Positions 5,601 through 48,295 of a DNA stretch of 64,000 nt are shown piece by piece (the first letter of the stretch is position 1; each line of letters opens with the position of its first letter). This stretch comes from Dimorphilus gyrociliatus (Eukaryota > Animalia > Annelida): the NCBI GenBank assembly GCA_904063045.1, contig CAJFCJ010000019.1:2610684-2674683 (forward strand), given 5' to 3'. Under the pieces are notes generated by a model. It worked only from the letters and a program-made list of their open reading frames with translations. It made no database searches and was not told the DNA's origin. A program made the position numbers and the translations under genes.

Positions 5601-8600
5601 AAAAACTACCTAAATTATACCAGACATCCATTTCACCCGATAAAGTCCTAACGTCCACTATAGTCTGACCCAGAAAATCATCCGATTCCCTTGTTAATTT
5701 CTGCCTCAATTTCGATTTTAAATCATTATCTTCATCCCTAAATGATAACCTTAATTGTATATTTATCGTTAAACGTGTAAATAAGATTAATTAAATTACC
5801 ATACTCGTATCTTGATACGGTCTGAGGAGTTATGGCATTCGCTAAAGTATTAAATAAAAAAAGAAGACGTGAGAAACATCGTTAACAGTATTTTCTGTTT
5901 TTTTCCTTGTAAAGAGAATTAAATTAGGTAAATAAGGAAAGAGAGTAGAGGCAAATTAGGAAAATACATAAAGGCTGAAAAAACTAACAAGTAAAACTTC
6001 TCGTTCCAGATCGGATTTAAATTTTGAGCAACAGTCCTTGTTCTCTTCCTTATCTTACCAACTTGAACCGTTACATAGGGGTCGCTTGTTCCCGTTTTGT
6101 CCTTGCCAATTAGCCCTTGAGCGCTAATTACTATAAAACAGGAAAAAAAATAAGGAAATGTTTATAAATCTAATGGAGAGAAAATTATAATCGAGTTTTT
6201 TAAAAATTACCTGTGATAGTAATTTTAGCAGACCACTTTGAAGTTCCGTCTAGTACATTTTGCTTGATAGCTTTCATGTGGCCGACATGAATTTTTTCAT
6301 CCATACCAAACAATTTGCTGTATATACAAATCGAAACGATCAACGATCATTGATCAACTATATAATATACTCAATAGAAAAGAAACTAAAGAAGAAAGGA
6401 AGAAAGAATTCTATTCTAAATTTCTATACCGCATCAATTCAAATATTTCCGGATTGTTGCGTTCCCTTTCGTCCATACGCTCTTTCATTGCAGTAATCAG
6501 ATTCTGGGTCCGATCTTCACAGCCGTGCTTCGAGCTCTTTTGGGCCGCTCTTTGGAGGCAATCGGCGTTAAGAAGGTCTTTACATCGTTCGTGACATTTG
6601 ACGTTACATTCGCTACAACGCAACCCTTGCCTAGCCAAACCCCAAAGCAAACCACCGCATTCGAAGCAAAAGGTCGGAGAAGTAGCTGTCCAAATGTGGA
6701 AGTTATGCGGGGTACTAGATGAAATCGGATAGATTAACGCTTGAAGCGTCTTTTTGTAGACGTGAGATTTCTGTATATACAAGTATTCATTACAGTGTAA
6801 ATATGTATTCCAAAAGGTACAAGGTAACAGCGCGTGCTCCTTTGTCATCTTTGATACATTATTGAATGTTTACAAGCGCGTTCTTGTACTGATGAGACAC
6901 TGACGTTAATCGCGTTTTGTAAAGAGTTAAAAACTACTCAAAGTCTACTTTCGTTTCGTAAACATCACGAAATGAGTTTTTGTAAACAATCGACATTTAT
7001 ATTTCATAACGCTTAGATATAAAGGAAAAAGAGAGTAAACACATAGATTGGTACTACTACCATCCGTTAGGGAATGGGCGTAATGTGAGTAGAATAATGT
7101 AAATGCGACAGAAAATAATATACGAAAAAAGTCCAATGTGTAATTTTTTCTCGCCTCCTAAATGTTTAATCGATTTCCGGCTGAGGTGTCGACAAAAATC
7201 AAAATAGGTTGCTAAGCGAGGCGCGCGTTTAGAGAAAAAGGCGGAAATATATTCTAGTCGACCTATTCGTATAATCGATATGAAAAGAGAACGACCAAAT
7301 TCCCTGTAGTCGCTCCGACTTAATTCGTCGAATTGGCTCCCGGTACATAAATCGGAGTGGTGGAAGAAAATTATACATGCAGATAACCGCTACTCGTGCT
7401 GTCGCATACCACAAAATATTTTCATCACTCTTAACCCCCAAAAACCCTTCGCTATCCTTTTATTTTCCCTCCCGTTTCCCTATTATTTTACCACTCACCA
7501 GTTCCTCATCGAATAAAGATGCCCTGGCGGCGAACGTCGAACGCAAATTCGAATTACGTTTCGCAGCAAGCATTGTCTGCAAAGGATGTTTTAGTGAACA
7601 TATAGCAATCATAATACATAATTTATAGTACCCTCTATCTATTCGGAAGGTAGTGTGTTTCATAAAATAATGTCCTTATGTATATAATAATAATTCCTCT
7701 AAGTTAGTATATTTACTTTATTCGTATTTTTACACAACGGCATTACATATATATAGAAAAGCAATTCCTTTAATTCTTTATAATTATCAACCCAAAAAAT
7801 TGTTCTTATATATGCAAATGAAATATGTGCATATGCGCATATATGAATATTTATAGTTATTAATTGGCTTAGCATAAATGCTTGTTGCAAGAATAAATTT
7901 TCTTGCACGTAATCTAATAATTTATATAAAAATGTATACTCTTCTATCCCTTTATGAAACAGATCGTGCAATAAATATGAGGAAATTGTGAAAGGAAAAA
8001 TCGATAATCTTATATATAGGCTAACATACATATTTGGGTATAAATTTATAAATACATACCGTATATTTCATTAAAAAATAGATGTAGACACTATACTCTC
8101 TATTAAAATTACCTATTTATGGACTATCTTTCCTGATATCGAACTTATTGCGATCGTGTATAATTCGTTTATAGCTATCCTATACTCCTTTATATCGGTA
8201 GTGTACATTCTGTATGCATATATGATAGGTTTACTAAATATATAAAGAAAGTCTGTAATTATATATATATATACACGTATATTCTAGTATATACTTTTCC
8301 CATCCCGAGGAAAATATATACTAATACATTGTATATGTGGATATATATATAAACAGCATATCTATACAAACAAATACATATAAACAATATGTTTATATAG
8401 ATATATTAATTTTTTTTTTCTGTCTATGAAACACGACTAAATGCACTTGCAAAAGCTGATACATACAGTACGTACTCTTCGTTTAGAGAGAAGTTCTTAT
8501 TTTAATATCGAAAATGTATAGTGTACACATCATAATGGTATATTCTAGGGTTTATACTCATTTTCTTATATATATATACATATACAGTATATGGCATAGG

Positions 8601-10455: not shown

Positions 10456-11049
10456 CTAAGATGGCGCTGCAGTTAAAGGAAGAGGAGAAGTCCACCATTC
10501 ATATCGGGGTCCCCTGGCATTCCTAATAGCTTGTTGTCGAACATAGGCTGTCAATTCATTGGCAGATAACCTGGATGCTCTTTCCGCTTTAAATTTTGTA
10601 GAACCGAACTTTGTACGAGCGAACATTGCCGCGGTCATTGGCTGGCCGATATTCGGGGCAGCATCAACTGGCTTAAGCAAAGCAGGATTGTTTTGCTGAC
10701 TAAATTGTAGAGGCTCACTATAGACGACTGAAACGGAACTACCTTGGAATTGATAAGATACTTCGCCAGGATCCACCCAGATGCTGAGATCAATTGGAAG
10801 ACAGGCGAGTAATTCGGTTAAATCCAGACCTGATACAGTAGCTGCTGATACTATAGCGGGATCGTTGTTAACTTTCAAGCAACGAAATGCAGAACCTTTG
10901 AAAGGTCTATCAGGATACCATTGAGAGGAAAATTTAGACAGCAGGTGACGCGCTAGTTCTTCACCAAACATGTCCACTCTCCTCCTTGGTAGTTTATTAA
11001 ATAAATATGACATAACCAATTCAACGGCAGCACGAATTTCGTTGTGCAT
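10456..11049 (-). CDS. tob: BTG/Tob antiproliferative protein (Tob type), single coding exon
   Basis: BTG box A/B (LPRRRVDMFGEEL..WYPDRPFKGSAFRC; WVDPGEVSY) and Tob-type C-terminal motif PMTAAMFARTKFGSTKFK. The ATG at 11049 is the likely start. Confidence 0.93.
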   Translation of the reverse strand: MHNEIRAAVELVMSYLFNKLPRRRVDMFGEELARHLLSKFSSQWYPDRPFKGSAFRCLKVNNDPAIVSAATVSGLDLTELLACLPIDLSIWVDPGEVSYQFQGSSVSVVYSEPLQFSQQNNPALLKPVDAAPNIGQPMTAAMFARTKFGSTKFKAERASRLSANELTAYVRQQAIRNARGPRYEWWTSPLPLTAAPS

Positions 11050-11285
11050 TTCCTGTTCAAAACAATTCAATTTGTAACTCTCTTGAGATACAGTTCATTC
11101 ACTTACAAAATAAAAAGAATATTCTCATTGATTGATATATAAATCTCCATATAACCACGAAAATAAGAAATAAACAAACACTAAACTTACCTAGTTTGTT
11201 AATTGCTAATACTTCGTCCAAAATAAAATAACGACGTTTCCTAACGTTTTATATGAAATATCTGTTAAGCGATTACAAACCCGAG

Positions 11286-13930: not shown

Positions 13931-14785
13931 TCAGTCAATTTCCATTAGATGATGCCATTGGATCACTTCGACACCGGGATATTGTAAAATCCTGTTCCAT
14001 TGCTCGAATTCACTTTCCTCTGTCGCGTTTCGACCTAACCTAACTTGACCCCGGGGATCGTCGCTTCTCAGCCTCATCTGAGCATAAACAGTAACGTAGA
14101 GCGTCGTTTCGTTTAAGTCGTCGATTTTTGGTGAGATAGGAAGAGAGAAAAATTGCTTATAAGCCGGATGCGTGGATTTTTTGATAGTTTCCGTTTCGAA
14201 TTTTGACATTTTTTTGTTAGCTTGCTTCAATTCAACTCTCACATAACTATCTTGAATAAAGAGAAATATCAGGGTTTAATGCACATTAATTTCCATACGT
14301 TTGCATATATTACTGATGGGATTTTCGGTGATTATACAATTTATAAGGAGATATTTAATTTATATCTTTATAGTAGACCATAGATTTATATTATAAACTG
14401 TATTTAATACGTAATGAAGTCAGTTTACATATATCTTTTACAGATGCCTATTTTTCTTTTGTAAAAGGATGGATAAATACATCTCAATGTGTTTAGGCGT
14501 ATGAATTTTGTATAAACTTATAATTGTATGAGGATATTTTTTTACATAAGGTAGAAGGGTTTTAAGAGAACAAATGCAGCTATTATTATGAATAAAAGTG
14601 AAAGGGAGGGGGGGGGGAGGAAATTATGATTAATGATAGATAATTACCTGGTGCCCTTCCTAGTTGTTTGCGTAAATCGTTAGCCCGTAGAACACCAACT
14701 GATAAAGTTTCATTCTTTGGTTCAAATTGAACGCTTAATTGTAGCATGCCAAGTTCCTAAAACGGTTAAAAAGGAGATAGTATAT

Positions 14786-14822
<37 letters not shown>

Positions 14823-16032
14823 TAATATATATATATGTACATATATCTACAGTAAATATATACACTGTATATATATATATATATATATGATAAATTTTGA
14901 TGATGATGCAGGTGGTATATCTATTTTCATAATGATCTGCGTGAGATGAAAAATGCCTCTATTTCTCTTATAAAAATGACACATTAATCATGTATAATAT
15001 TTTAGCGTTGTATAATTTTGCAATTTGATAGAAAAAATGAAAGAAAGAAAGTGAAGGAAGGAAAAAAATAAGAACCGCTTTATCGATCTCCCGCCATTCC
15101 CGAATCTCCTTCACTAAATCCTGTTTCGAATTAAATTCAACTGTTACTTCACCCAATTTTTCTTCTCGTTTCAAATTTGCAGATTTGTGAAAGATTTTCA
15201 TCACTAATCTCGTTTCCGATAGCTTATTTGGCGGAAGTGTTTCGAAGAAGAATGTCTCATTGAAAACTGGATTATTAGTTCGTTTATGAATGATAGACGT
15301 CTGCTTTTGTACTTTAGTCGGCATTAGCATTACTTTAACGAAGGGATTAAGTGTCTCTTCCGGATCTGTTGATCGCAGATTCTCAGCTTTGAGAAGCGTC
15401 AATTTCAATCTCTCCGTTTTCTTGCAATATTGAAGGGCATATTTAAGTTCACCAAATTCTGAGTTTGGTTTACATATTTTTAATTTCTCCAAGTCAGCAT
15501 CTTCAACTCGAGGGAGTGACGAACGTCGTCTATTATAGGCTCTGTTTGACCTTTCGGTAGCTGCACGTTCTGACGAGTACTGCTCGCTTCCACTTTGAAG
15601 AGGCACCCCAAGGGGAGCAACTACTGAAGGAACCTTACGCCTCTTGCTGCTGGCCCTCCTTGTCAAACGGCAGCTAGTGGTCTCCGATTGTTTGTCGTCA
15701 TCATTCCATGAATGACTTCTATGCTTTGGAATATGAGAACTGCGGAAATCCTCTCCAGGTAACGATTTACTCCTCTGGAAAGTAGTAGAGCTTGGCAATA
15801 AAAGGCTCGGCGATGGACAAACAGGAGAATGTCTAGGAGAGGGTCCACTTGATAAACTATTTGAATCGTCATCGTTATTGTGGCTACTTGGAATGTAAAA
15901 CGTTGGTATTGTATTCGGTGTGACGATGTTTAAATGAGTTTTTCTTTCCTTATCCAAAGATTGTAACTGATTTTCCAATTCGCCTTTAACGTTTCTACAT
16001 CTGGTCACTAACCAATCCTTTATTGAATCCAT
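13931..16032 (-). CDS. Soluble tandem-C2 protein, C2CD4-like / synaptotagmin-like, 3 coding exons
   Basis: N-terminal NIVTPNTIPTFYIP resembles the C2CD4 motif NVLTPDKIPDFFIP. C2A (NPFVKVMLMP..NPVFNETFFF) is in exon 1. C2B is split over exons ~14649-14757 (ELGMLQLSVQF) and 13931-~14250 (DSYVRVEL..GQVRLG..QW). No TM segment. Confidence 0.85.
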
Positions 16033-20958: not shown

Positions 20959-21859
20959 ATGATGATTTCGTCAATTATACAGTTAATTTTAGCTTTCCAA
21001 TCCTTTCATTTATTAAATGGACGAATTATTGATATGACTTATACTTTTAATTCGGATACATACTATTGGCCCGGTAGTAAGAATTTTAATAGAACTGTTA
21101 TATTCAAGGGCTCCACTGGAAAATTTTGGTAAATATTGTTTGCACAGTTTTAAATACTAATTAAATACTGTCAATCTGTTCAGGTATTACGCGAATGAAA
21201 TGGAGTTCGCGGAACATGGTGGAACACATTTGGATGCTCCCAGTCACTTTTATAAAGATAAGTGGAATGTTGACGATATACCTATCGAAAGGTTAATTGC
21301 ACCTGTGTACGTGATCGATATTAAATCAAAAGCGGAAAAAGATAGTTCGGCTTTATTAGAAACGGAGGATATTCAAGCTTTTGAGAAAAATAACAATGTG
21401 AAGATTGAAAGAAAATCAATTATCCTGATGAACTCCGGCTGGCAAGAACGATTGGGTAATAAAACGTTATATTTTGGCAATGATAAAAACAATGCGTCAG
21501 ACTTTCATTTCCCTGGATTTCATCCGGATGCTGCTGAATGGCTTATTAAAGAGCGAGATATTGTTGGAATTGGTGTTGATACCGCTTCAGTTGATCACGG
21601 CCCAAGTTCAGACTTTTTAACTCACGTTGCGATTTCTAAAGGAAATGTTTATGGCTTAGAAAATGTTGCAAATATGGACAAGATACCTAAAATGGGGGCA
21701 AAGTTGACGGTATTGCCAATGAAGATCGGAAAAGGGAGCGGTGGACCGGTTAGAATCCTCGCCGAATGGGATACGCAATCAGGCGGTGCAGATGCATTAA
21801 ATCCACTTTTTATGCTATCAAACCTTATCACAATATTTCTATTAGTTTTATTTCTTTAA
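20959..21859 (+). CDS. Cyclase-family metal amidohydrolase (kynurenine formamidase/isatin hydrolase-like), secreted with probable GPI signal
   Basis: Exons 20959-21128 and 21184-21859. Signal peptide MMISSIIQLILAFQSFHLLNG, metal motif EHGGTHLDAPSH, GIGVDTASVD, GLENVANM, GKGSGGPVR, and a hydrophobic C-terminal tail. Confidence 0.92.
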
Positions 21860-24800: not shown

Positions 24801-26122
24801 ATTAGAAGATCGATTTTAATAGTAATCGTCATTATTTTTAAATATAGACATTAAATAATCTTACAGCGCAGAGATATGCAATTAAAAAAGGTAGAACGTC
24901 ATGTACGTCAATTTTTAACTATAGGCTTCTTTTTCCCTCTTCCTCTCTTTCTTTTTCATCCAATAGACAGTATAGCCGATGTATATGTTGCACAATAAAT
25001 TCATTAAACTATGTACATATAAAATAATACTAAGTACCGTACACTATAATGTATTGTGGTACGTATATTCTTTTTACACGTATAGACTACTGAGAATACA
25101 ATGAAACATAATGGAAATTCTTTTTTCATTTTCTGTAATCAATTATCTCGTTGATAAGATTATGAGAAATCTTTTAAATATTATACAATTGTAAACTTAT
25201 TATTTTAGTATTGATATTATCGCCCAACAGCAATTATAAAATTTTCCTCAAGAATCTTACTAAACACTTTCACACGCTACTATTATATTGCATTTTTATA
25301 CATTCGCATTTCGTCTAGAGAGCTTACTAGGCGTCGTTAGCGTCGACACAGTTTCTTTACCAAGCATTAGACATTTGGTATTCATCGGCAAAACGTATAT
25401 CTTTCTTACTGCCAGAGGATGAAAAGGTGCGTATATATAATCTTCTTTAGTTCTTAACGTATTAAGTTTAATTAGTAAGAACGTCTATGCTCTGCTTTTA
25501 GTTTATTAACTCTTAAAGGTTTACTTTAAAGAGAATCGAAAGATTATTAAATAAAGGTGACATACGCCGTAACTGAACAGAAAATAGCTGGTATCTATCA
25601 AAAGAAACTATATGGGTTTAGTTTTTAATAAAGGAAGTATTAAGAAATTATCTATTTCATACTTCTAATGTGTAAAAGAAGAAAAAGAAGGAGAAAAGAG
25701 ATAGATTATACAGTGATTATAGTTGTTAATTTTCGTAGTTTATTAGACGTCGCTTACATTCATTTTCGATATGCCTTTTAAAAAACGCTGTACAACAGAG
25801 CTTTTCCACTTAGCGTCTAGATTTTCAATCGTTTTATTAAAAGGGAAAAAAATCGAAGGTTTTTCTTTTCAGCATTCTACTACTTACGATCGGTGAAAAA
25901 TGGACGATTTTTTCTCTTTATTTCTTTATATATATATCTCTTTATATTTTGTATATATTGTATATATACTGTATATATTATATGGTTGCAATCTATTTGC
26001 TTATATAGTATGCCTACATCGCTTGCGTGTAACCAAAAACTGTTTCGACTATGTTTTGAAGCAGTGAGCGGAAAAGACTTGATCGTTTGATGTTTCTTTT
26101 TTTTATACAGACTGGTTCTCTG

Positions 26123-26906
26123 ATGGGCGATGATGAGCAACGCCACCGCGTCGTTTTCATGGGTGCTGGTCGAGTTGGAAAGACGAGTATTATTCGACGC
26201 TTTCTCCAGAATAGTTTTTCAAATGCTTATAGAGAAACAATAGAGGATTTGCACTGTAAGGATTATAACATTCAAGGAACTTCAGTAAAAGTCGACTTCC
26301 TGGATACGTCGGGCGATTTGGCATTTCCTGCAATGCGACGTCTTTCCATTTCGACGGTTCGTCAAATATTCGATTTGTTCAATTATATTTTCTATTTATA
26401 ATGTATAAAATTAAAAGGCTCACGCGTTCGTTCTCGTCTACTCGGTCGATGACGATCGTTCTTTCGACACTGCTCGATCAATTAGACAACAAATTAAGGA
26501 GCAAAGAAGTAATTACGAAGCGCTTCCCTGCGTCGTTGTCGCCAATAAGATCGATCTGGGACCAAATAGGCAAAAGGTTTCTACCGCCCACGTGGATAGT
26601 TGGTTAAATGAAGAGGGGATGACGAACAGTTTCGTAGACGTTTCCGCTAAAACTGGTACAAATATCCAGCAAATATTTCATAAACTTCTCGAGCAAGCCG
26701 ACATACCGGAAGTAAAAAAGTTAGAACCGATCCTCAGAAGGAGATTATCGGCTAACTCTGCCTCATTGGCAAGTATGCGTGAAAGATTGAGGGTTCAAGA
26801 AAGTTCACCCAAAGGATTTCAAAGAAGTAGAAGCCTCATACGAAGGTCAAAGCCGAAAGTAAAAGAAAGTCGCGATCCAACTAGTAGCGATTGCGTAATA
26901 TCTTGA
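26123..26906 (+). CDS. RASD/Rhes/Di-Ras-like small GTPase
   Basis: Exons 26123-26356 and 26418-26906. GAGRVGKT P-loop, YRETIED, DTSG, NKID, SAK, FPAMRRLSI, basic C-terminal extension and CAAX box CVIS*. Confidence 0.93.
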
Positions 26907-30089: not shown

Positions 30090-32456
30090 TTAGGAGGCGA
30101 ATATGCCTTTAATTTGTACTGCAAAACAAAATGGAATATTAGACAAAATGAAAACATATTGCGTGATTAGAAAATATTATACATACCAGACATATCAGAG
30201 AATCCGCTGTCTTTTAAGGCACTTATTAATCTACTTGGAGTCGCTTCGGATCCTTTCGATTTCTTCCATGTATATAAAGCTTCCAATGTTTTATCCTGTT
30301 TAGAGAATGATCGTTAAGTTTCATTTTATACTATTAGGGCTTAATATTAATTTATCTGCTCTTTATCCTTTAGCATATGTGCCCTTTCACCTTTCTTTTT
30401 ATATAAAAGTCAACTTTGAGAAAGAATTACAAAGCAGTTGCTTATTAAAAATTGTGCAATACCTTATTAGTTCCATTCTTATTATACTTGTCTTCAATGC
30501 AATTAAGGTCATTGTCTGTGAGAGTTAATTTTCTAGATAAAATTTTCCATTCCTCATTGATGAGAGCATTAGTTACAATTTTGGTGAAGGCTTTATTGAT
30601 TTTCTTGTCTGAATAATTTGAAAGTAAATTGAAGCCTTAAAGAAATATAAATGAACTACCGAAAATCTCGGAAGCAGATGAAGGTTTGCTTTCTTCTTCA
30701 TTAAAAACCCCGCAATTCCGTTGAAAAATCTTATCTGCGAGGTCATCCCGTCCCCCTTCAAACAATGCCCAGTACAAGATATTTACTTTATCAGCAGACC
30801 TATTTGTGCCTTTAAACCATCTGACTAGCATATCCTTGATGATGTTACCATCGGTCTTAGAATTTGACATTAATTCCATATCTTGTATTCTAGCGTTACT
30901 TATTCCCAATTTAAGGGCTACTAACCTCCATTCGTCACCTAATTCTTTAGCTATTTCATCGAATAGCTCTTCGTTAAGAATTCCAAACGACGCCATTTTG
31001 TAAGGAGCTTTCTTAATTCGCTCTAAATTCCTCTCCTCCTTTGGAAGTGATACTACAAGCTCTGTAAGTAATTTGCGTTCGAATTCGATCTCTCCTTTTT
31101 CTGTTTCTTCTTCCTTCTTCTTTATTTGCTTTTGATCCTTTTTTTTCTTAGGATCTTCTTCCAGCTGAGCAGGTACAATTTCGAACAATTGAACATGTCC
31201 CCTATACAAATCTAATCCATGTTGAGCAAATTTATCGACAACTCGTACTTGTACGTCGGATGAAGACGTGTTTACATGAGAATTATATATAAGGGGAACA
31301 CATTCTTCAGTTCCTTTGACGTTTCCCCTAAACCTCACCTCCAAACATTGACCCTCTTTAATAACAATATCATCACTAGGAGACGGTCCGTTAGTAAACC
31401 CTTTTTGCTTGAGGCGCTGAACATTGACAATAAAAAACAAAGCTGTATTACATGCTTCATAAACTATCTTTGGGCTAATATAATTAACTAATTATAAATA
31501 TAAGAATGGAATACAATTGTGTATCGGCTAATTAACTTCCATACATTCATGTAAATTGAATGGCTTAGTAATATATGAAATAAATATATTAGTATATGGA
31601 GTATACTAACTAAGAGCACGTCATCCATTTTATCAGCGCGACAACATTCTAAGAAGGCTTCTGTTTCTGTAGAATTTTGCTTTAGAATAAATTTAACTGT
31701 TTTTCTTGAAAGGCTTCTTTGCAATCCATTGGCGATATTTGGGACTTGAGTAGCAGTTATGTTTGATTTTACTCGAATTAATAGAAGTTTATATTCTCTG
31801 TAGGAGAAGTTTTAAGATAAATCTGAGGAAGCTTTGAAAGTGTCTTAATTAAGAATTTAGTTACTGGACACTGTAATCCAAGTTGATTGAATACAAATCA
31901 CCATCAATGGTAGACGACAAATCAGATGCTAAAAACCATTTGTCTTTGGAATTCTGATAAAGTAAATAAACATTTCCCTCCTCCTCTTGATCACCATCTG
32001 CGACGAAATACAATTATTGGTAATAGAAATACTCTAACGCAATACAGAGTAGGAAATATGTCACCTTTTTTAGCTTGGTAAGAATTCCCAACAGTTGGAA
32101 GACCACTACTTTTTTGAGAATCTTTTTTCACACCAGCACATTGCATAGTAACGGAGCTTTTGGGAAAAGGTACAGAGCCATATGTCTTTAAGCATACCTT
32201 AGGACTGCATCCCAGCAAAGAGTCTAATTCCTTGGGATACCTAGCCTTTGCTTCGCCAACTGTAGTACTATCGATCGGCTGAACCTGTTTTAAACCACTA
32301 GCTTAAGTGCAACGAGTAATATATAGGCTAAAAATAGATGCTGACAAAAATATATTTCATATGTACATAATATTTGCTGCCTATGATTTAGTATTTATAA
32401 AATAATAAAATATCTATACTGTATAGCATACATGCTTACATTACTCCTATATTCGA

Positions 32457-37970: not shown

Positions 37971-38796
37971 TCAGGATCTATTTTGCAATTTCCTCCGTCT
38001 CATCATTACAACAAACAGGCAGACGGATGAAGAGAGAACAATTAACGGCCAGAGCAGACCGTGAACAACGTGAGATAGCTGAAACCTTCTACGTCTAATC
38101 ACTTGCGAAGAATTTTTAGGATTGTATAGGCATTTATAAGTAGAACCTTTCGTACCATACTTGTTGACATATTCCAGAACGTCTTTTTTATTTCTTTCTT
38201 TTGAACTCCGGCATGGTGGAAAATACGTGCACTGTTTAAGAATAAATTAAATTTAGCCTTTGAAAGGCAGTATCCTTATTTGAATAATATATATTGTTAA
38301 TATTCTTTTAAATAGATGTACAAATGAAAATTCTAGAAAAGTTATTAAATGATTTACAATAAGTTCTATTATATAGATACAAAAGCTTCACCTTCTCGCC
38401 CAATTCGCTTTCATCCTGCGCGAGGACCGATGAATTTGTAACAGAATTTTTTACTTTAATAACGACACATGGAAAGGTACTAGCACACTCTTTTCCACAA
38501 GAACAGCGCTGTTCACCTCTATAGGTAGGACTCTCAGCTGGTGAACAAGTAGTCGTGTAAAAGGAAGCGCTTATTGAGAAAGGATGAACAATCAAAGCTG
38601 CCACTATTGCTAATGCTGTAAGACTAGCTGCAGTTGAGGCTGCGAGTATCGTATAAATGCAAATATGCAGAATTTTATTGTTGGTTACATATCGAAATCG
38701 CCAAGGTTTCGCCCACATAAAATGTTCCTCGTCATCGTCGCATTCCGCATCGTTGGGACAATGCAAAACCACAGCTTCGATTTCATCATCGTCCAT
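37971..38796 (-). CDS. BK (Slo1) channel beta-subunit-like protein, isoform A (exon 38392-38796 plus exon 37971-38231)
   Basis: TM1, loop CSCGKECASTFPC..|CTYFPPC..YGTKGSTYKCLYNP, TM2 HGLLWP. This is the two-TM Cys-loop KCNMB-type architecture. Confidence 0.88.
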
Positions 38797-39419
38797 CGTC
38801 GCCTTTTCGTTATATGAGCGCTTGAGAAAGGCAGGCGTCTCTGGTGACGCTTATATGCGTCTCTGACGGCGGCTAATGGCTAATAGACACGCTACACAGT
38901 CGGGTAATATGGGGATTACACTCGCTTTCCCCTTTTCTTTCACTCATATATTTTGCCTTTATGAAAGGCCGGAATAAAGAGACTCAATGACACTTGCGCA
39001 CGTTCGTGTCATAATCTTGTACACTAAAAAGATCTTATAAATTCTTAACCCAATTAACTAAGACAGGAGTTCAGATTTTTCTTTTTAAAAGTTAATAGCG
39101 CGATGGAAAATCGATGAGTAGAATAATCATATATGCAAAGAAACTGAAAATGCTATTTAATTCTCCACCCACGTTCTGTAAAAATGTATTCGACCTATCT
39201 GCGTATAAATACCGTCTAATTGGTGTTACAAAGGTTAGACGAGTTGTGCCATCTTGCGTCCAATTTTTAAATTTTTCACTGTTTGTATTTTAGAGCGTAA
39301 CCTAAGAATCTTAATGTTGTCGTTATTTCCCCCCATCAACAAAATTATACGACGTATTAGAAAAAATTAATAAAAGACGCTTATTTCGTAAACGTTTATT
39401 TACTTTGCAATATACTGAC

Positions 39420-39944
39420 CTCCTTATTAAGAATAGACTCATTTTCCTTTATTCTTACTAAATGATCTCTCAGCTCTTGATCTTTATATCGTACTGTAAC
39501 AATCAAGCAGGGGTAGACTGACGAGCAGGACTTTCCACATGTACACTTTCTATCTTGCGACACGTACTCCGTTGAAGTACATTGTGTCTTAATAAATGAG
39601 GAAGCCTTTCGCCAAGGCTCAACCAAAAGGACACCAATAACAGCTAAAGAGATCGCTGACCCAATAGCCAACAACGTTAACCATAAGTATAATGTTACAG
39701 TGCATAACTTTGTTTTTTCGCAACAAGAAAATAGAAATACATCACCATCTTCATCCTCATCGGTAGATTGGGATAAGCGCTTCATTAGGAATGCGGGCTG
39801 TGGAACGGTTAGAAGATCTTTGTAACCCTCGCTAGTGTTTATCGCTGTTCTGCCAGTTTCTTTGTCATCTTCATCCTCACTAGAATAGTTAAATAAGGGC
39901 GGTGGAGTGATAGTTACTGGTGGAATACGAGATGTAGATGCCAT
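39420..39944 (-). CDS. Second BK-beta-like first exon (isoform B), apparently spliced to the shared exon 37971-38231
   Basis: TM1 plus CTCGKSCSSVYPC, ending in a phase-0 donor (AATAAGGAG|GTCAGT) at the homologous position. No private second exon found between 38800 and 39419. Confidence 0.8.
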
Positions 39945-40919: not shown

Positions 40920-43900
40920 TTAAGGTTTTAAGTTATTTCCCAGAGGTTTCCGGTTATGCAGACAAACGGATTTCATTTGACGGAAACTTTCCTGAAGGGA
41001 AAAAGCGAATCTATCCGATTTTGTTTCTCCGCAGCTTACGAAGGAAGACACTACGACAACGATGTAATTCGGATGAGGGTTATAGCAAGCTCCGTAGCCG
41101 TCCTCTACAACAGGACCATAGCACATAAACGCGTCCATAGTGGTAGGAACCTGTCGTAAGATGGCGATACTTGTCTATAGTTATATGCTTTAAAAAATGA
41201 AAATTTTGTGAAAAAAGGTATTACAAATAAATGCCACTATGCCCGTAGAACACAATATATAGGAAATATGGGGGAGAGTAAACTAGATAAGGAGACTATA
41301 ATTGCCCACGAATTATCACCGGAAGTACATTTTTTAAGATACAATCATTTACATTGATTATTTTTTTCATATTTCTATATAAATATAACGGCCAATGGTA
41401 CGGGGCCAATAGTAGGTCTATAGTAGTTCGATGCGTATAGCATCTGTTGGCTTTTTTATTTCAATGGCTGATGACTCGACAACGTCGAATAATTTTGAAT
41501 TTCGACAAAACTCGTCAAATTCACCTATCGTAATAGGAACGACTGTTGGTGGAGTCATCTTAGCCATTGTTACAGTTATCGGAATATATGTCATAGTAAG
41601 AAAGAGGAAGAAGTTATCATATGAATCTGTTAAAGGCGTTACGCGATCAGCTCCCAATACAAGAAGTTCATCGCCAAAACCAGTTCATCACTTACAAAAC
41701 AGATCGAAGTCAACTTGTTTAGCTTTAGACCGTTGGAAAGAATACGAGAATGATATTTCGGATAGTTGTACGTCAAGGTATACTATTTATTAAACATGTT
41801 ATTTTTTTTTATCTATAAATAGAAATATTGAAATTTTCATTAAATTCAATCTTTCTGAAAAACATGTTTTTTTTCTCATTCATTAATAATATGTAAAAGT
41901 ATGACCAGTAATTCATGACTATATAAGTATATATATTTACTATCTATATTAGTATATATGGTATATGTATATAGATACTGAATATATATAAAATTTATTT
42001 AAGTGACGAAGATATTAGGAGGGGAACTGTACCGACTATCTCATTATTCCTAAAGAAGGATACAAATTGTATCGAATTAAAAGTTATCTGTATTAATGAG
42101 ATAACTAGCTCTGAAGAGCCTCTAACGAAGGGAGTTTTCGTTAACATTTTCCTCTATGATGGTAATAAAGAAATAAAGCGTCAACAAACAAAAACGATCG
42201 ATAGATCTAACGTAATTACATTTAATGAGACTCTCTATTTTCAGGTAAACACATTTTTATATATAGATATTTAAAAGTGTATATTTTAGAAGAACTATTT
42301 ATAGTACTACTAATAATTACTCTTCTCTCGAGGATTAAAGTATCCTCTTTAATTAAAAATCAATTTCCTTTAAATGAGGTTATTAATTCATTTTTTTCTC
42401 TTTTAAAGCTAAAGAAACGTTCGAAGAATTATCGTATCAGAATTTCTGCTTATAGAATTGATAGAGATAGAATTCGACATGAATTGGGTCATCAAGTTGT
42501 TCCCCTTGAAGAAATAGAGGACGAACGCTACTTTACAACTGAATTGTTACCCAATCTTCAATTAAAGGACGAAAAAAAGACCTCAGAAATAGAAGTATCT
42601 TTGATGTTAACTACAAATTCTATAATCATTCAGCCTATTCGGGTAATCGATGGACTACCAACAACTTCTGAAGCCTATTTTAAATTAACACTATTCGAGC
42701 ATGGCCATAAGAAAGATCGCCTCTTAACTGAGAAAAAGCATATGAAAGAATTAATTAATCTGGAAGATACTTATGAATTTCAAATATCTCTTACGAATTT
42801 GGAGGATTATAGTATTCGATTGGATTTAATCGAAAGCCTCACGGAGAAGGAACGTCTAATTGGAAGAGTCACAATCGGATCGTATCAATACGCAAGAGGA
42901 TCAGGTTTGGAACATTGGCAGGATACATATACAAACTTTGGTCGGCATTCAAGAATGCTGCATAAACTTAAAAGATAAACTGGCAGGGGTGTGGACAAAG
43001 GAGGCATACATTGTAAACTTAAAAAAAAAAAAATTAACAAATAAATTAAAAACGGAAAGGTGTACAGTAAAACGGGAAAAGCAAAAGGTCATTTTTACCT
43101 GGCTTGTACTCAGGGTAAAATGATTCGACATTTTGTAACTTTCATCAAGAAATAACTCGGGGGTTCCAAGGTTCTTCTCTTCTGATAAACGTTTAAGTGC
43201 CAATAAATGATTATCTATTCCGTATCCAAGTATAGCCTAAAATAAAGTTATTGTATGTTTTTTTTGTTAATTATACTAAAACTATGTTAAGTATTTAAAT
43301 AAATAGTGTCCGTATTTAAAAGTATAATAAAACGTCATACGTCCATAAGGATTTCTGTTTGTCTATTCATTGCTCTTCGAAATAATGACATCTTTTCTTC
43401 TTCCTGATAAAATTTCCAAAGGGACAAAATTAATAAAACACTATGAGAGGAGAAAAGAATTATTTCTTTTCTCTTTTTATTCTGGTCTAACCGAAACTTG
43501 AATTTCATCAACCATAGCTCGAACCCAGTCAAGGGCTTCTGAAGAGCAGGCTCGTATATTGTCAACTCTACCAAAACGGAATCTTCTAATTGATGCACTT
43601 TCGTAAGTTGAGACCAATTTCTTGTACTCTTTGTAGTAAGTTAGCTGAAGAGCCAGTTGAATAAAAGCATCCGGACTCATGTTTTGAGACTTAACAAATT
43701 CTTTTCCATAGTCAGAAAAACGGAGTATGTGTAAATCGAGCGATTCGATTAATTTATCGATTCTGTTACGGGCGAGTTGAATTTCATCTAGTATTTCTGG
43801 CTTCAATTCCCAGTTTAACTTCTGTGGCTCATCCAGATCCGTCAATGACATCAATCTACATAACTTCTGCTTTTGCAGTTCATCCCTGCAAGAAAAGATA

Positions 43901-45575
43901 ACATAAACAATTTTTTTTATTAACCTGTAGATGTCTCTAGTCGACGTACATATATTTGAGAAGATGTTCTATAAGCTGAACAACAGCAATGCCCTCTGCA
44001 GGGGAATGTTCGTAATTAAGACCGCAAGTTCCATCCATGCAAACAACAAATTGCATAGTCTTGTCGTACCATCTATTGCAGGAATTAAAGGAGCTTCCAA
44101 GCCCATGAAGCATCTGAAGGGCTTGAGAAACGTCGTCACGATTCTTTCCGGTCGTTTGATGATTGAATGTGGCCGGTAGCGTATGATCAATACAAAGTAT
44201 GAAGATACTATTCTCTATCAGGCTTAAACTCCTTTTATTGACCGGTTCTACAATCGATCAAGAAATTTCTTTTTTACCTTTATACGTATAACTAGATAAT
44301 TATTTCCCGCGCTAACCTTCCATCAATTTCAACCGACATTCAGCCCACTTATCTCGCTGTAAACTGGTTAAGACTCCCACTTCCTCGTTAGCATCTCCTT
44401 CATCGGCAAGGGTCATGATCCTCTTCAATTGTGCGTAAATATTATCAACACTTAGTCGGCTTCGATTATGTTTTAGATACAGCGGGAAGAGCTTTTAAAA
44501 ATGAAATGAGACAAATATCCTATTTCCCCTTTGTTTATCGTCATTTTATTATTTTATCCTACCTGGTTATTACATGCAACAATAATGTGTTCCGGTTCTA
44601 TATTGCCGGTGGTAGACATATATACGTGAGAATCTTTATGGATGCCGGGTTCCCGATAAGTTGAAAATAATCTATAATATTGTTCCATACATAATGGTTG
44701 TCCTTTCTTGCTATGCCGGGCGCGATCGACCGGAAGTTGTTTTCTTGAGATTAAGAAGGGTTTAAGTTGCTTATATAGAAAGCGCTAAGATATAATGTAT
44801 TACGATCAACTTACGAGTCAATCACAAGCTTATAATCCAAAATACCCGAAATAAGTCTGGCGGCGAATCTACAAGCGATTAAGGCGTTTAATAAAGAACA
44901 ATAGGATTATTAGGTGCCTTCAAAGAAAAACAATTATATAGGCGGCGCTCGCGAGCGATAAGACCTTCAACCCACTAATTCAGGCAATCGTCTCGCTAAT
45001 CGGCCGCAAGCATTTTTTGGCACAACCTTAAGGCGTCACTCTTTTCAGGGAAATTCTGTCTTGGAAAGACCATTCCGGGGTTAGAATTGACCGGAAGAGC
45101 GAGTTTGTTTTTAAAATACATGTCTTCCAACCAGAAATCGAATGCCTAACAGCGGGAAAATAAATTAATTAGAGTTATTAGCAAAATCGAATTGCACCAA
45201 AAGAGGCGCACCCAATTTTCCACTTGATTCGCGTAGTCGAGTAGCTCGCTTTGCAGATCGTTAGCGACCGTCTCTCGAAATTTCCCAACCAATCTTTTTG
45301 TATTCTCATACTGGGAATCACCTACCAATGGTCGTATACAGCGCAAATACTTATCAAGCGTTACATCGACATCCGGAACGGGAAGTTTCGGCAATTCTTT
45401 CTGTATAATCGGTTAAAGATAAGACCTGTATAGCCTTTTTATTCTCTTTTTCTTTAACCCCTTAATTAAAGAGTCTTACATTTAAATCCCACTGTGGGTA
45501 TTCTTCTATATCCAACGACGCGACGCGTTCGACGTACTTTTTCACAGGATGGGGGGATCTCTGCGGACGTGACAT
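40920..45575 (-). CDS. ChAT: Choline O-acetyltransferase, multi-exon
   Basis: LPKLPVP, LPVNSNPG, LCMEQYYRLFSTYREPG, NRWYDKTMQF, catalytic EHSPAEG, SPDAFIQLALQLTYY, STYESASIRRFRFGRVDNIR, GIDNHLLAL, LSTSQ|VPT, YGPVVEDGYGACYNP. The first coding exon (ATG 45575) is preceded by an acceptor. Adjacent to VAChT. Confidence 0.97.
41464..42978 (+). CDS. Divergent synaptotagmin-like protein (TM + C2A + C2B) nested antisense in the last ChAT intron
   Basis: Exons 41464-41777, 42004-42244 and 42409-42978 are in phase. N-terminal TM IVIGTTVGGVILAIVTVIGIYVIV followed by RKRKK; C2A ..ITFNETLYFQ..ELGHQVVPL; C2B ..AYFKLTL..LIGRVTIGSYQYARGSGLEHWQD. Confidence 0.85.
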
Positions 45576-46609
45576 GAATCTGAAAAAACAAGTTTATTCT
45601 TTTCCTCCTTGTCCTTTTTTTATCATAGAAAGATGGATTATAGAATATTTAACAAGGGAAAAAACCACAGTGCATTATTAGGTATTGTTTCATCTTAGTA
45701 TGTTTGCATAATCGAACACAATGGTATCCTGGAGAATCACGTAACTAATCAAGCTTGACGTCTTACGACCAACAACAAATTGCGTAAACAGGGCACGACG
45801 CTAACAAACAAGCGTTTCCGATGGGCAAGCACGCGTCCCGGGCGTCACTTTAGGCATCTATTTCTCATAGGCGTCCTTTATCATTTCTTCACTTCCATAA
45901 ATAGGATTGCTTTTTTTTTCATTTTAAAGACAGAGAGAGATAGACAGCGAGAAAGGAGAAAGCGAGAAAGCTCAATTATTTATATTAATGACAAAGCTTT
46001 ATCAATTTCACGTGAAGTTCTTGCTAAGTCTCTTAAAGCACAATAAAAGCATCTTAAACTTAATTGTGAAGCTATAATTGCCAATATATCTTTCATTTTT
46101 GTTTGGTTTTATTTACTTATAATATTTATTTAAAAATAATTAAACGTGCTTTAACATATACACATGGTTTATTTATATCAGGTAATTTCCTAATAAATCA
46201 TATTTACAAGTAATTTTTTACGTTTTTATCTTTTTGTTTTTCCTCATATTTATATAGAATAATTAAACAACATTATGACAATTAATATTTCCTATTTACA
46301 GAGTATTGCCTTGCACACACGATTTGTTTTGAAGGGAAAAAAGTAGTGCGAAAAGAGGAAGAAAGGATAGGTTATAATAAGTTAAAAATGCTTAAAACGT
46401 CAACTATAAAGCCTATAGTATTAATATACTTTTCGAATATTAATTATCTTGTCACAAGAAAACAAAATTTAGATTAGTTAACTAAAACAAAGTTATCTCT
46501 TATTATAATTGAACTAAATGGCTGGTATATAGAGAATACATCTGCTGGCCGCTATAAGGGAAAAAAGGGAATATTTGGAACTGTAGTATTCGATAATCTG
46601 TAGAACTTT

Positions 46610-48295
46610 TTATTTCAAGTCTGTACGATCGTTCAAATCAACCAAATCTCCCAAACTATTCCTTGATTCTGCTCCGACAGTCGGTGGGGGAGGCCTTGCC
46701 GGAGGAGGTGCATTGGAGACACTACCATAGGAAGGTGGAGGAGCATTTGTGTCTAGTTTAAGATGATTCATTGTTCCATTCGGAACCTCCTTTTCATCAT
46801 TTACAATATAAGTCTTGTAATCGACATCTGGCCCAGTTCCAGGCGTAGCAGTTACTAGAACGGCACCTTCATTTTCGAATTGCTTATAATCGTATACATT
46901 GCGCAAAAGTAGGAGTATTGGGACGTATAGTATATTGGAGAAGAAAATACCAACGTTTAGCCAGGTAAAGCCGATAGTTCTAACAATTCCACCTGCCACT
47001 ATGGGGCCAAAAGCATATGCAAGAGAATATGATATATCAGCTATTGCGTAAATGGAACCATAAACGGATACATGACGATTATCGACGAGAAAACCGAGCA
47101 TCGGCAAAACGGAAGTATCGATTAGCGCAATTCCAAAACAGCAAACACTCAAAGGTACAATAACGGCAAAAAAGTTCGTACAGAATGGTAGAACTAAACA
47201 ACTAATTCCCTCCATAGTCAAACCAGCAGCTGTAAGAATCCACTGCTTATTTGGGTAGGTTTTTGCTAATCTTACTGTCAGATATACGCCGAGAACATGT
47301 GGAAAGAAGGCAGGCAGCCACACCATTCCAATTTCCCATCCCTTGGCCTGCATTGTATCCGCCATCCACCGGGCTATAGTCGGTTCGATAAAGGCTAAAG
47401 AAACATTGGCCATAACTAGTGCACCGGCGCAAACTGCTATATAAGGGTCGAGAATGAGTTTATAGATTGGTGTGGCATTCGGAAGAGAGGACTGCATTTG
47501 CTTCCTCTCCCTTCTATTGGGTTTCATTACGAGGAATATAAGGAAACCATCGATTAACGCGACAAGCGCCAGAACTATAAACGGTATACATTTACCAGCA
47601 AAATCATAGAGTATACCGCCGAAGGGAGGTGCGAATAAGGAGCCGAAGCTTATAAATGCCTGGGATATGCCCAGCGCTTTCGTTCTTTCTGTCTCCTCAA
47701 CGTATATATCTGCTATCATAGCCATACCAGCCGTATCAGCAAAGGCTGAACCGATACCCTGCATACTTCTAGCAATGAACAGGACTGTATAACTACTTCC
47801 GAATGCGAAAATGGTTGTTGATAGGCACATAATCATTAGTCCTACGAAGAGCGGCAGATCATACCCCACTCTATCCATGACCGTTCCGGAAAATGGATTA
47901 ACTAACAGCTGAATTATGGCCTTTGAGGCGAAAAGGAGGCCGATAGCACCACTACTCGATTCTTCCCTATGAGGTGAATCGGTGGGTTTAATTCTTTCTG
48001 GCTTTAGTGTACTTGTCCAGTTAAGAGTTAATGATAAAGCAGCGGTTGAAAGAGGTGATGGCGATGTCTGAACATCTTTCTGTTTCTCTCCCAAGTAAAT
48101 CGGAATAATTGGGACAATGACCATATACAGCATATTATCGAGTAAAAGAGCAACGCAGACAATAATGAGTACGAGTCTGCGCTGCGACATAGGATCGTGG
48201 ACTTTTTCGTCAATACTACTGATAACATCGTGTGACTCCTTGTTTAGTAGTGGGACGCGAAAGTTAGGGATTCTGTAGATAAAGTTCAGTGCCAT
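46610..48295 (-). CDS. VAChT: Vesicular acetylcholine transporter (SLC18A3/unc-17), intronless ORF
   Basis: Multi-pass MFS membrane protein with ALLLDNMLYMVIVPIIP, IALIDT and the VAChT-type YGSIYAIADISYSLAYAFGP. Located between upstream non-coding exons and the first ChAT coding exon. Confidence 0.97.
   Translation of the reverse strand: MALNFIYRIPNFRVPLLNKESHDVISSIDEKVHDPMSQRRLVLIIVCVALLLDNMLYMVIVPIIPIYLGEKQKDVQTSPSPLSTAALSLTLNWTSTLKPERIKPTDSPHREESSSGAIGLLFASKAIIQLLVNPFSGTVMDRVGYDLPLFVGLMIMCLSTTIFAFGSSYTVLFIARSMQGIGSAFADTAGMAMIADIYVEETERTKALGISQAFISFGSLFAPPFGGILYDFAGKCIPFIVLALVALIDGFLIFLVMKPNRRERKQMQSSLPNATPIYKLILDPYIAVCAGALVMANVSLAFIEPTIARWMADTMQAKGWEIGMVWLPAFFPHVLGVYLTVRLAKTYPNKQWILTAAGLTMEGISCLVLPFCTNFFAVIVPLSVCCFGIALIDTSVLPMLGFLVDNRHVSVYGSIYAIADISYSLAYAFGPIVAGGIVRTIGFTWLNVGIFFSNILYVPILLLLRNVYDYKQFENEGAVLVTATPGTGPDVDYKTYIVNDEKEVPNGTMNHLKLDTNAPPPSYGSVSNAPPPARPPPPTVGAESRNSLGDLVDLNDRTDLK

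What the first reader, a model, noticed from the sequence alone, without database searches (positions are those of the whole stretch)
41151..43098. Synaptotagmin-like gene nested antisense inside the last ChAT intron
Seen: the final ChAT intron (41151-43098, ~1.95 kb, far longer than its other coding-region introns) fully contains a 3-exon + strand gene encoding TM-C2A-C2B with degenerate Ca loops. Known: the cholinergic locus is noted for VAChT nested in the first ChAT intron; I know of no vesicle-trafficking gene nested at the 3' end. Inference: a three-gene cholinergic unit (synthesis, vesicle loading, vesicle trafficking) that is either co-regulated or mutually exclusive through transcriptional interference.
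Basis: partly seen in the sequence, partly recalled or inferred. Interest (0 to 1): 0.75.

Follow-up and report, generated by a model that had tools for sequence, protein, structure and literature searches.

The report
Divergent synaptotagmin gene inside ChAT intron
A real but very divergent, probably calcium-insensitive synaptotagmin-like gene lies on the opposite strand wholly inside the last intron of the acetylcholine-synthesis gene ChAT in a compact annelid genome. It is conserved in a related species, but nothing yet shows that it works together with the cholinergic genes.

Summary
The minus strand carries VAChT (46610-48295) followed by a 10-exon ChAT coding region. ChAT's last intron is exactly 41151-43098 (1948 nt), while its other eight coding introns are at most about 150 nt.

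Inside that intron, on the plus strand, sits a three-exon GT-AG gene: 41431/41464-41777, 42004-42244 and 42409-42978, about 374-385 aa. It encodes a transmembrane segment, C2A and C2B.

Exon-by-exon profile searches, a confident C2B fold and family-specific motifs place it with the "synaptotagmin-15-like" proteins, on a very long branch. Nearly all of the calcium-binding aspartates are replaced.

A related species (Logan assembly) keeps exon 1 at 75% and exon 3 at 86% identity with no gaps, while the flanking non-coding sequence cannot be aligned. That indicates purifying selection. The relative's exon-3 protein and its ChAT exon share the same contig signature, so the neighbourhood is conserved there.

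The idea of a "three-gene cholinergic unit" is untested. The default reading is an ordinary antisense nested gene in a tightly packed genome, much like TIMP inside synapsin.

Human SYT15 and CHAT both lie in 10q11.2, which hints at old linkage worth checking.

The parts
41151..43098 (-). Last intron of ChAT (1948 nt), which hosts the nested gene
   Evidence: GT at 43098-43097 and AG at 41152-41151 on the minus strand. The flanking exons match Carn_acyltransf positions 467-532 and 520-574.
40920..41150 (-). Last ChAT coding exon, including the stop
   Evidence: Pfam PF00755 at 3.4e-11, profile positions 529-574.
43099..43236 (-). Penultimate ChAT coding exon; the 5' boundary is approximate
   Evidence: Pfam PF00755 positions 487-532; minus-strand frame map.
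41376..41385 (+). TATA-like box about 46 nt upstream of the first ATG of the nested gene. This is a consensus match only, in AT-rich DNA.
   Evidence: Read directly from the sequence. Not tested for function.
41431..41777 (+). Nested gene exon 1: short luminal N-terminus, a hydrophobic transmembrane segment followed by RKRKK, and a linker. The start is the ATG at 41431 or at 41464.
   Evidence: Translations. The relative's protein P0083 is 78/104 identical with no gaps, and conservation ends at the predicted donor. The clade-B profile matches positions 29-103 at E 1.6e-3.
42004..42244 (+). Nested gene exon 2: N-terminal half of C2A
   Evidence: Translation. It aligns to the C2A first half of P0032 and P0071, directly upstream of where exon 3 aligns. 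Profile E 1e-7.
42409..42978 (+). Nested gene exon 3: C-terminal half of C2A, the whole of C2B, and the stop codon
   Evidence: PDB phmmer: Syt4 C2B 7.7e-5 and Syt1 C2AB 1.5e-3. Representative search best distant hit 6e-12. Profile 1.6e-30. AF2 pLDDT 82.8, with Foldseek top hits Syt7, Syt4 and Syt1 C2B. Relative's P0001 is 140/163 identical.
43040..43045 (+). AATAAA signal 62 nt after the stop codon, still inside the ChAT intron
   Evidence: Read directly from the sequence. Not tested for function.
46610..48295 (-). VAChT, a single 561-aa ORF upstream of the ChAT coding exons on the same strand
   Evidence: PDB phmmer: VAChT 1.1e-157 (529 bits) against VMAT2 at 355 bits.
45197..45394 (-). First ChAT coding exon (LPKLPVP... 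motif); the 3' boundary is approximate
   Evidence: Pfam PF00755 positions 1-68.

Best explanation
The intron holds a functional, single-copy, fast-evolving member of the synaptotagmin family. It is a type-I membrane protein with a short luminal N-terminus, one transmembrane segment and tandem C2A-C2B domains.

Its nearest relatives are the proteins that databases call 'synaptotagmin-15-like'. Almost all of the aspartates that bind calcium in Syt1 are replaced, so it most likely acts as a calcium-independent membrane-trafficking or adaptor protein rather than a calcium sensor (inference).

The whole transcription unit fits inside the intron on the strand opposite to ChAT: a TATA-like box, three exons and an AATAAA signal. 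It would therefore be transcribed from its own promoter (inference).

The nesting is most likely a neutral result of gene packing in a very compact annelid genome. It is kept because it does no harm, and because removing it would risk both genes. Any interplay with ChAT would be limited to the generic transcriptional interference expected for any antisense nested pair (inference).
For: Gene model: canonical GT-AG sites and fitting phases. The exon 2 to exon 3 join is collinear on homologues.

Family: exon-by-exon profile hits of 1.6e-30, 1e-7 and 1.6e-3, in the right order on one strand. PDB sequence hits are to Syt4 and Syt1 only. The AF2 model has pLDDT 82.8, and its C2B superposes on Syt7 and Syt4 C2B at TM 0.86-0.88 and rmsd 1.6. 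The family signatures RH.LGH..PL and YARG..L.HWQ are shared with the Syt15-like consensus.

Selection: the relative's proteins are 140/163 (exon 3) and 78/104 (exon 1) identical with no gaps or stops. Similarity collapses right after the stop codon, after the donor site and in a ChAT intron.

Copy number: there is a single copy in the 77.9 Mb genome.

Neighbourhood: P0001 (nested exon 3) and P0002 (ChAT exon) both carry the signature '2 contigs, longest 4841' in Logan.

Ordinariness of nesting: intronic genes make up about 6% of Drosophila genes (PMC3786989 abstract). TIMP nested antisense in synapsin is conserved across animals (PMC2825198).
Against: No transcript evidence could be reached, and the organism's own proteome is not in the protein collection.

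Pfam C2 scores only 17 bits, below its 22-bit cut-off, and the genome-wide C2 scan does not list the gene.

The placement in the Syt15-like clade B has 93/96 support, is not starred, and rests on a branch of 2.56 changes per site.

The co-location in the relative rests on matching contig statistics, not on the DNA itself. Exon 1's homologue has a different contig signature (3 contigs, longest 2259).

'Neutral packing' is a default, not a demonstrated history.
Confidence: 0.65

Rival explanations
1. One reading: synthesis (ChAT), vesicle loading (VAChT) and a vesicle-trafficking synaptotagmin form one regulated cholinergic unit. The nested gene would be either co-expressed with ChAT or switched against it by antisense transcriptional interference.
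For: The nested gene is a vesicle-protein family member inside the cholinergic locus. The neighbourhood is kept in a related species. unc-13 and another tandem-C2 gene lie within 40 kb. Nested genes can interfere with host transcription (PMC3192792 abstract).
Against: No expression data were available. The nested gene has its own promoter-like and poly(A)-like signals. It is calcium-insensitive and highly derived, unlike core release-machinery genes. No paper was found describing such an arrangement. By general knowledge, most nested pairs show no functional tie.
Confidence: 0.12
2. The arrangement is a remnant of an old linkage between ChAT/VAChT and Syt15-type genes. On this reading the nested gene is the fast-evolving orthologue of a widespread 'clade B' Syt15-like gene that has long lived in or next to the cholinergic locus.
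For: The nested pair falls in clade B (93/96), and this genome has no other clade-B member. A sister relation to the genome's own clade-A gene is disfavoured (AU p 0.028). The clade-A Syt15-like gene lies on the same contig, 660 kb away. Human SYT15 is in 10q11.22 and CHAT/SLC18A3 are in the adjoining 10q11.2 interval (PMC11534156 and its reference to Stankiewicz 2012).
Against: A distance of megabases in human is linkage, not nesting. With about 17 human SYT genes, a neighbour within a few Mb is not very improbable. The long branch makes the clade assignment unsafe, and the AU test does not reject clade A (p 0.23). No other animal genome could be examined here.
Confidence: 0.15
3. The ORFs are a decaying or never-expressed relic (a pseudogene) of a duplicated synaptotagmin.
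For: The divergence is extreme, the calcium ligands are lost, WHXL has changed to LHKL, and Pfam is below threshold.
Against: All three exons are open with intact splice sites. In a species whose introns no longer align, both tested exons are 75-86% identical with no indel or stop, and conservation stops exactly at the exon ends.
Confidence: 0.05

Closest known systems
Synaptotagmin-15 and invertebrate 'synaptotagmin-15-like' proteins
   Same: N-terminal transmembrane segment and tandem C2 domains. It shares the signatures RH.LGH..PL (end of C2A) and YARG..L.HWQ (C2B), as shown. The best hits in 1.84 billion representatives carry this name. Calcium-independent behaviour is expected from the degenerate loops; calcium independence of Syt15 itself is from my own knowledge, not tested here.
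   Different: Only 22-30% identical to any of them, with a branch of 2.56 changes per site. The reciprocal best hit of a spider Syt15-like protein is a different gene at C19:1.99 Mb. The C-terminal WHXL reads LHKL, and Pfam C2 is below its cut-off.
TIMP nested antisense in an intron of synapsin
   Same: A protein-coding gene lying wholly inside an intron of a presynaptic gene, on the opposite strand, and conserved between species (PMC2825198).
   Different: That pair is conserved from flies to human. Here conservation is shown, indirectly, for only one close relative. Here the guest gene also belongs to a synaptic-vesicle protein family.
Cholinergic gene locus (VAChT within the 5' part of ChAT)
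   Same: The same locus, with VAChT immediately upstream of the ChAT coding exons on the same strand.
   Different: VAChT is on the same strand and is classically co-transcribed from shared 5' exons. The nested synaptotagmin is antisense, at the 3' end, and has its own start and end signals. A shared VAChT/ChAT 5' exon was not tested here.
Lineage-specific divergent invertebrate synaptotagmins (Syt22-Syt57 in Craxton 2010)
   Same: Stereotypical Syt architecture with sequence not conserved between phyla (PMC2823689). No close homologue was found outside one relative.
   Different: The tree gives it a tentative home in a multi-phylum clade, so it may be a derived orthologue rather than a new lineage-specific gene.

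Membership tests
Synaptotagmin family | Single N-terminal transmembrane segment with a short luminal N-terminus | tested here: met
   About 23 hydrophobic residues followed by RKRKK, starting about 20-31 residues from the start. Weak matches to Pfam transmembrane-segment families. The clade-B profile aligns its TM region (positions 29-103, E 1.6e-3). No dedicated TM predictor was available.
Synaptotagmin family | Tandem C2A and C2B domains at the C-terminus | tested here: met
   Exon 3 aligns from the C2A C-terminal half through C2B of Syt1 and of Syt15-like proteins. Exon 2 supplies the C2A N-terminal half collinearly. The AF2 model's C2B matches Syt7 and Syt4 C2B at TM 0.86-0.88. The joined protein was not folded.
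Synaptotagmin family | Pfam C2 (PF00168) above the gathering score | tested here: not met
   17 bits against a 22-bit cut-off for the exon 3 ORF. The gene is absent from the genome-wide C2 scan at E 0.01. This reflects divergence, since a profile of its relatives gives 1.6e-30.
Calcium-sensing synaptotagmins (Syt1-like) | Five acidic calcium ligands in the loops of C2A and of C2B | tested here: not met
   In the alignment to Syt1 and by direct reading, C2B has SEAY in place of SDPY and LIESLTEKER in place of LDYDKIGKND. C2A has TKGV in place of SDPY and YRIDRDRIRH in place of YDFDRFSKHD, so one Asp is kept. Syt1 residue identities are from my own knowledge.
Synaptotagmin family | C-terminal WHXL motif of C2B | tested here: not met
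   It reads LHKL, and W is nearly invariant in the relatives (column W184).
Syt15-like subgroup | Reciprocal best match with named Syt15-like proteins | tested here: not met
   Forward best hits are named Syt15-like. However, P0043's best match in this genome is C19:1992921-1993610 (42% identity, 1.8e-53), and the nested gene ranks eighth. For the clade-B proteins P0032 and P0036 the nested gene ranks fourth and sixth.
Syt15-like subgroup | Phylogenetic placement within the group | tested here: inconclusive
   It sits inside clade B with 93/96 support, not starred, on a branch of 2.56. The AU test does not reject clade A (p 0.23) and disfavours a sister relation to the genome's own clade-A gene (p 0.028). 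With Trichuris 'Syt12' included, the long branches attract each other.
Syt15-like subgroup | Family-specific sequence signatures | tested here: met
   RH.LGH..PL and YARG..L.HWQ are present in the nested protein and in the consensus of 23 Syt15-like proteins. Syt1 has different residues at these positions.
Nested (intronic) gene pair | Guest coding sequence and signals lie wholly within one host intron | tested here: met
   The guest CDS spans 41431-42978 within the intron 41151-43098, on the opposite strand. The TATA-like and AATAAA motifs are also inside. Transcript ends were not determined.
Cholinergic gene locus | VAChT and ChAT adjacent on the same strand, with VAChT 5' of the ChAT coding exons | tested here: met
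   VAChT ORF at 46610-48295. ChAT coding exons at 45394 down to 40920. The named best hits of a ChAT exon are choline O-acetyltransferases.
Cholinergic gene locus | Shared 5' non-coding exon, so that VAChT lies in the first ChAT intron | not tested
   This needs transcript data.

The most novel reading that the evidence does not exclude
The nested gene is the derived orthologue of an old 'clade B' Syt15-type gene that has been physically tied to the ChAT/VAChT locus since early bilaterians. The adjacency of human SYT15 and CHAT in 10q11.2 would be the loosened remnant. On this reading the tie reflects shared regulation in cholinergic neurons, making the cholinergic locus a three-gene unit in some lineages.
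Probability: 0.1. Interest if true: 0.75.

Novelty: new member of a known kind. Interest (0 to 1): 0.4.

Why it matters
The cholinergic locus is a textbook case of nested, co-regulated genes. A second nested gene of a synaptic-vesicle protein family at its 3' end would matter if it proved to be co-regulated with ChAT or anciently linked to it. It would give a simple system, in a tiny annelid that has published RNA-seq, CAGE and ATAC data, for studying host-guest transcriptional interplay in identified neurons.

As the evidence stands, the finding mainly adds a well-supported gene model. We could not find the gene in public protein sets, and its annotation status in the species' own proteome is unknown. 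It also gives an example of how far a synaptotagmin can drift while staying under selection.

Tried and rejected
The relative's 4841-nt Logan contig could therefore not be read, and neither codon-level dN/dS nor the gene order in the relative could be obtained.
- A scan of metagenome contigs with the exon-3 alignment found nothing.
- The exact-sequence look-up showed that the organism's own proteins are not in the protein collection, so annotation status could not be judged.
- The word search with exon 3 and with exon 1 found only the one relative each time.
- The repeat search found no terminal repeats or target-site duplications that would suggest arrival by a mobile element.
- The first tree joined the nested pair to Trichuris 'Syt12' by long-branch attraction. 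I rebuilt it without that row.
- A recent duplication of the genome's own Syt15-like gene was considered and is disfavoured (AU p 0.028).
- Pseudogene and chance-ORF readings were rejected on conservation and profile E-values.
- All searches were done exon by exon, by reference.
- No human contig was handled. The human SYT15/CHAT positions come from a paper only.
Full report
**Context.** The window is G000:C19:2610684-2674683 of a 77.9 Mb assembly in 349 contigs. It is AT-rich, at about 33% GC. A ChAT exon finds choline O-acetyltransferases as its best named relatives, with the annelid Lamellibrachia satsuma first at 81%. The size and contig count fit the published Dimorphilus gyrociliatus assembly (about 350 scaffolds; PMC7854359). 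That identification is an inference.

**The host gene.** On the minus strand, a single 561-aa ORF at 46610-48295 is VAChT. It scores 529 bits against solved VAChT chains and 355 bits against VMAT2. Downstream of it, exon blocks cover the Pfam Carn_acyltransf profile collinearly from position 1 (45188-45385) to position 574 (40989-41153), as shown.

- Reading the minus-strand frames gives ten coding exons, with eight introns of roughly 40-150 nt.
- The ninth and last intron starts with GT at 43098, directly after ...LSTSQ.
- It ends with AG at 41151, directly before VPTTMDAFMCYGPVVEDGYG.

This 1948-nt intron is more than ten times longer than any other coding intron of the gene.

**The guest gene.** The plus strand inside the intron carries three open segments that join through canonical sites.

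| Exon | Coordinates | Splice context |
|---|---|---|
| 1 | 41464 (or the upstream ATG at 41431) to 41777 | donor AAG\|GTATAC |
| 2 | 42004-42244 | acceptor TTTAAG\|T, donor CAG\|GTAAAC |
| 3 | 42409-42978 | acceptor TTAAAG\|C, ends at TAA |

The phases fit: exon 1 ends in phase 2 and exon 2 ends in phase 0. The product is 374 aa, or 385 aa from the first ATG.

- Exon 1 encodes a short N-terminus, a hydrophobic segment of about 23 residues, RKRKK and a linker.
- Exon 2 encodes the first half of a C2 domain.
- Exon 3 encodes the second half of that domain plus a complete second C2 domain.
- A TATA-like box (41376-41385) and an AATAAA (43040-43045) also lie inside the intron. The transcription unit could therefore be fully nested. 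These two motifs are sequence readings only.

**Is it more than chance?** Pfam alone is weak, with C2 at 17 bits against a 22-bit cut-off. All other tests agree with each other.

- phmmer of exon 3 against PDB sequences finds almost only synaptotagmins: Syt4 C2B at 7.7e-5, and Syt1 C2AB at 1.5e-3 with the alignment running from the end of C2A through C2B.
- A profile of exon 3 plus its one close homologue, run against 1.84 billion representatives, gives only 40 hits at E up to 1e-3. The best distant hit is 6e-12. All hits align to the C-terminal 170-190 residues of proteins of about 430-470 aa.
- The named hits are "synaptotagmin-15-like" from scorpion, tick and spiders, a snail hypothetical protein, and a Trichuris "Syt12". 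They carry Pfam C2 domains.
- I built a profile from twelve such full-length proteins and ran it against all 1485 six-frame ORFs of the window. The exon 3 ORF scores 1.6e-30, the exon 2 ORF 1e-7 and the exon 1 ORF 1.6e-3 (on the TM region of the profile), as shown.
- On individual homologues, exon 2 ends one residue before exon 3 begins. For P0032, exon 2 residue 79 aligns to 244 and exon 3 residue 8 aligns to 254. This supports the splice model.
- AlphaFold2 on exon 3 with 24 homologues gives mean pLDDT 82.8. Foldseek puts the Syt7, Syt4 and Syt1 C2B domains first, at target TM 0.86-0.88 and rmsd 1.6 Å.

**Calcium loops.** In the Syt1 alignment and by direct reading, the C2B positions that hold aspartates in Syt1 read SEAY (for SDPY) and LIESLTEKER (for LDYDKIGKND). 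The C2A positions read TKGV (for SDPY) and YRIDRDRIRH (for YDFDRFSKHD). At most one aspartate per domain survives. The C-terminal WHXL reads LHKL. I infer a calcium-independent protein.

**Selection.** The word-index search finds one close homologue for exon 3: P0001, from Logan, 179 aa. It finds one for exon 1: P0083, from Logan, 129 aa.

- Over the coding parts they are 140/163 and 78/104 identical to the window, with no gap and no stop. A ChAT exon from what is very likely the same organism (P0002) is 121/130 identical.
- Similarity vanishes immediately after the nested gene's stop codon, immediately after the predicted exon 1 donor, and in the ChAT intron read in frame.
- Non-coding DNA between the two species is thus beyond recognition at this level, while both tested exons of the guest gene are held. 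This is the pattern expected of purifying selection.

**Conservation of the nesting.** P0001 (guest exon 3) and P0002 (ChAT exon) both have the Logan record "2 contigs, longest 4841". Their genes are 500-900 nt apart in the window, so they very probably share those contigs in the relative. P0002 also reads through intron sequence, so the contig is genomic. P0083 has a different record (3 contigs, longest 2259). A TA-rich palindrome in guest intron 1 could explain a break in a short-read assembly. The neighbourhood is thus conserved in one relative. Full nesting there, with the last ChAT exon beyond exon 1, is not shown.

**Which synaptotagmin?** The guest gene is single-copy.

- The gene in this genome that best matches a spider Syt15-like protein lies at C19:1992921-1993610, with 42% identity and E 1.8e-53. 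It is 660 kb from ChAT on the same contig. The guest gene ranks only eighth in that search.
- A maximum-likelihood tree of the region homologous to exon 3 shows two Syt15-like clades. Clade A holds the spider proteins and the C19:1.99 Mb gene. Clade B holds the scorpion, tick and snail proteins.
- Once the long-branched Trichuris row is removed, the guest pair sits in clade B with 93/96 support on a branch of 2.56 changes per site.
- The AU test does not reject a place with clade A (p 0.23). It does disfavour a sister relation to the genome's own clade-A gene (p 0.028).
- Searches with the clade-B proteins P0032 and P0036 find no better clade-B candidate elsewhere in the genome.
- The guest protein shares the signatures RH.LGH..PL and YARG..L.HWQ with the group consensus.

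My reading is that it is a strongly derived Syt15-like gene, possibly the clade-B orthologue and not a recent local duplicate. Craxton's survey notes that many invertebrate synaptotagmins are divergent and not conserved between phyla (PMC2823689).

**How it most likely works.**

- Shown: the gene structure, the fold, the family, the loss of calcium ligands, the constraint between two species, and the position and strand.
- Inferred: it is transcribed from its own promoter inside the intron, and it encodes a calcium-independent membrane-trafficking protein.
- Also inferred: being antisense inside an intron that RNA polymerase must cross to complete ChAT transcripts, it may be subject to the generic interference described for nested genes (PMC3192792 abstract).

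Nothing here shows that it is expressed in, or excluded from, cholinergic cells.

- Nested genes are common. About 6% of Drosophila genes are intronic (PMC3786989 abstract).
- A conserved antisense guest in a presynaptic host is already known, namely TIMP in synapsin (PMC2825198).
- No flanking repeats point to a mobile-element origin.
- Literature searches found no report of a gene nested at the 3' end of ChAT.

**A lead worth following.** Human SYT15/SYT15B lie in 10q11.22, and CHAT/SLC18A3 lie in the adjoining recurrent-deletion interval 10q11.21-q11.23 (PMC11534156 and the Stankiewicz 2012 title in its reference list). Here one Syt15-like gene is nested in ChAT and the other is 660 kb away. 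This may reflect old linkage, or it may be coincidence. No other animal genome could be examined with the tools at hand.

**Verdict.** The family guess is right in outline. The functional "three-gene unit" remains a hypothesis. This is a new member of known kinds: a nested antisense gene, and a divergent Syt15-like synaptotagmin. Its location is curious, and it is of moderate interest.

Noticed in passing
window 2983-8031 (-), 13931-16032 (-), 40920-48295: Several presynaptic genes lie within about 48 kb: unc-13 (C1, MUN and C2 domains), a second tandem-C2 protein with no obvious TM segment, ChAT with its nested synaptotagmin, and VAChT. In a genome this compact the clustering may be chance, but it is striking.
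   Followed up: partly
G000:C19:1992921-1993610 (-), locus L006:2919-3644: The genome's conventional Syt15-like gene (42% identity to a spider Syt15-like protein) lies on the same contig, 660 kb from ChAT. Its exon for the C2A first half is about 2.5 kb upstream.
   Followed up: partly
window 38308-38796 (-) and 39396-39944 (-): Two paralogous ORFs with weak matches to the BK-channel beta-subunit family CaKB (1.3e-4 and 0.01, both below the cut-off) lie directly downstream of ChAT.
   Followed up: no
The true start may therefore be 41431.
   Followed up: partly
window 41928-41990: A TA-rich near-palindrome (29-nt arms, 83% complementary) sits in intron 1 of the nested gene. It may explain why the relative's short-read assembly appears split between exon 1 and exon 3.
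   Followed up: no
window 10456-11070 (-), 21200-21859 (+), 26087-26906 (+), 30637-31440 (-): The other genes in the window are a BTG/Tob family gene, a putative cyclase (kynurenine formamidase-like), a Ras-family GTPase and a death-domain protein.
   Followed up: no
whole assembly G000: The assembly statistics (77.9 Mb, 349 contigs) match the published Dimorphilus gyrociliatus assembly of about 350 scaffolds. None of four exact ORF products tested from the window is in the big protein collection.
   Followed up: partly
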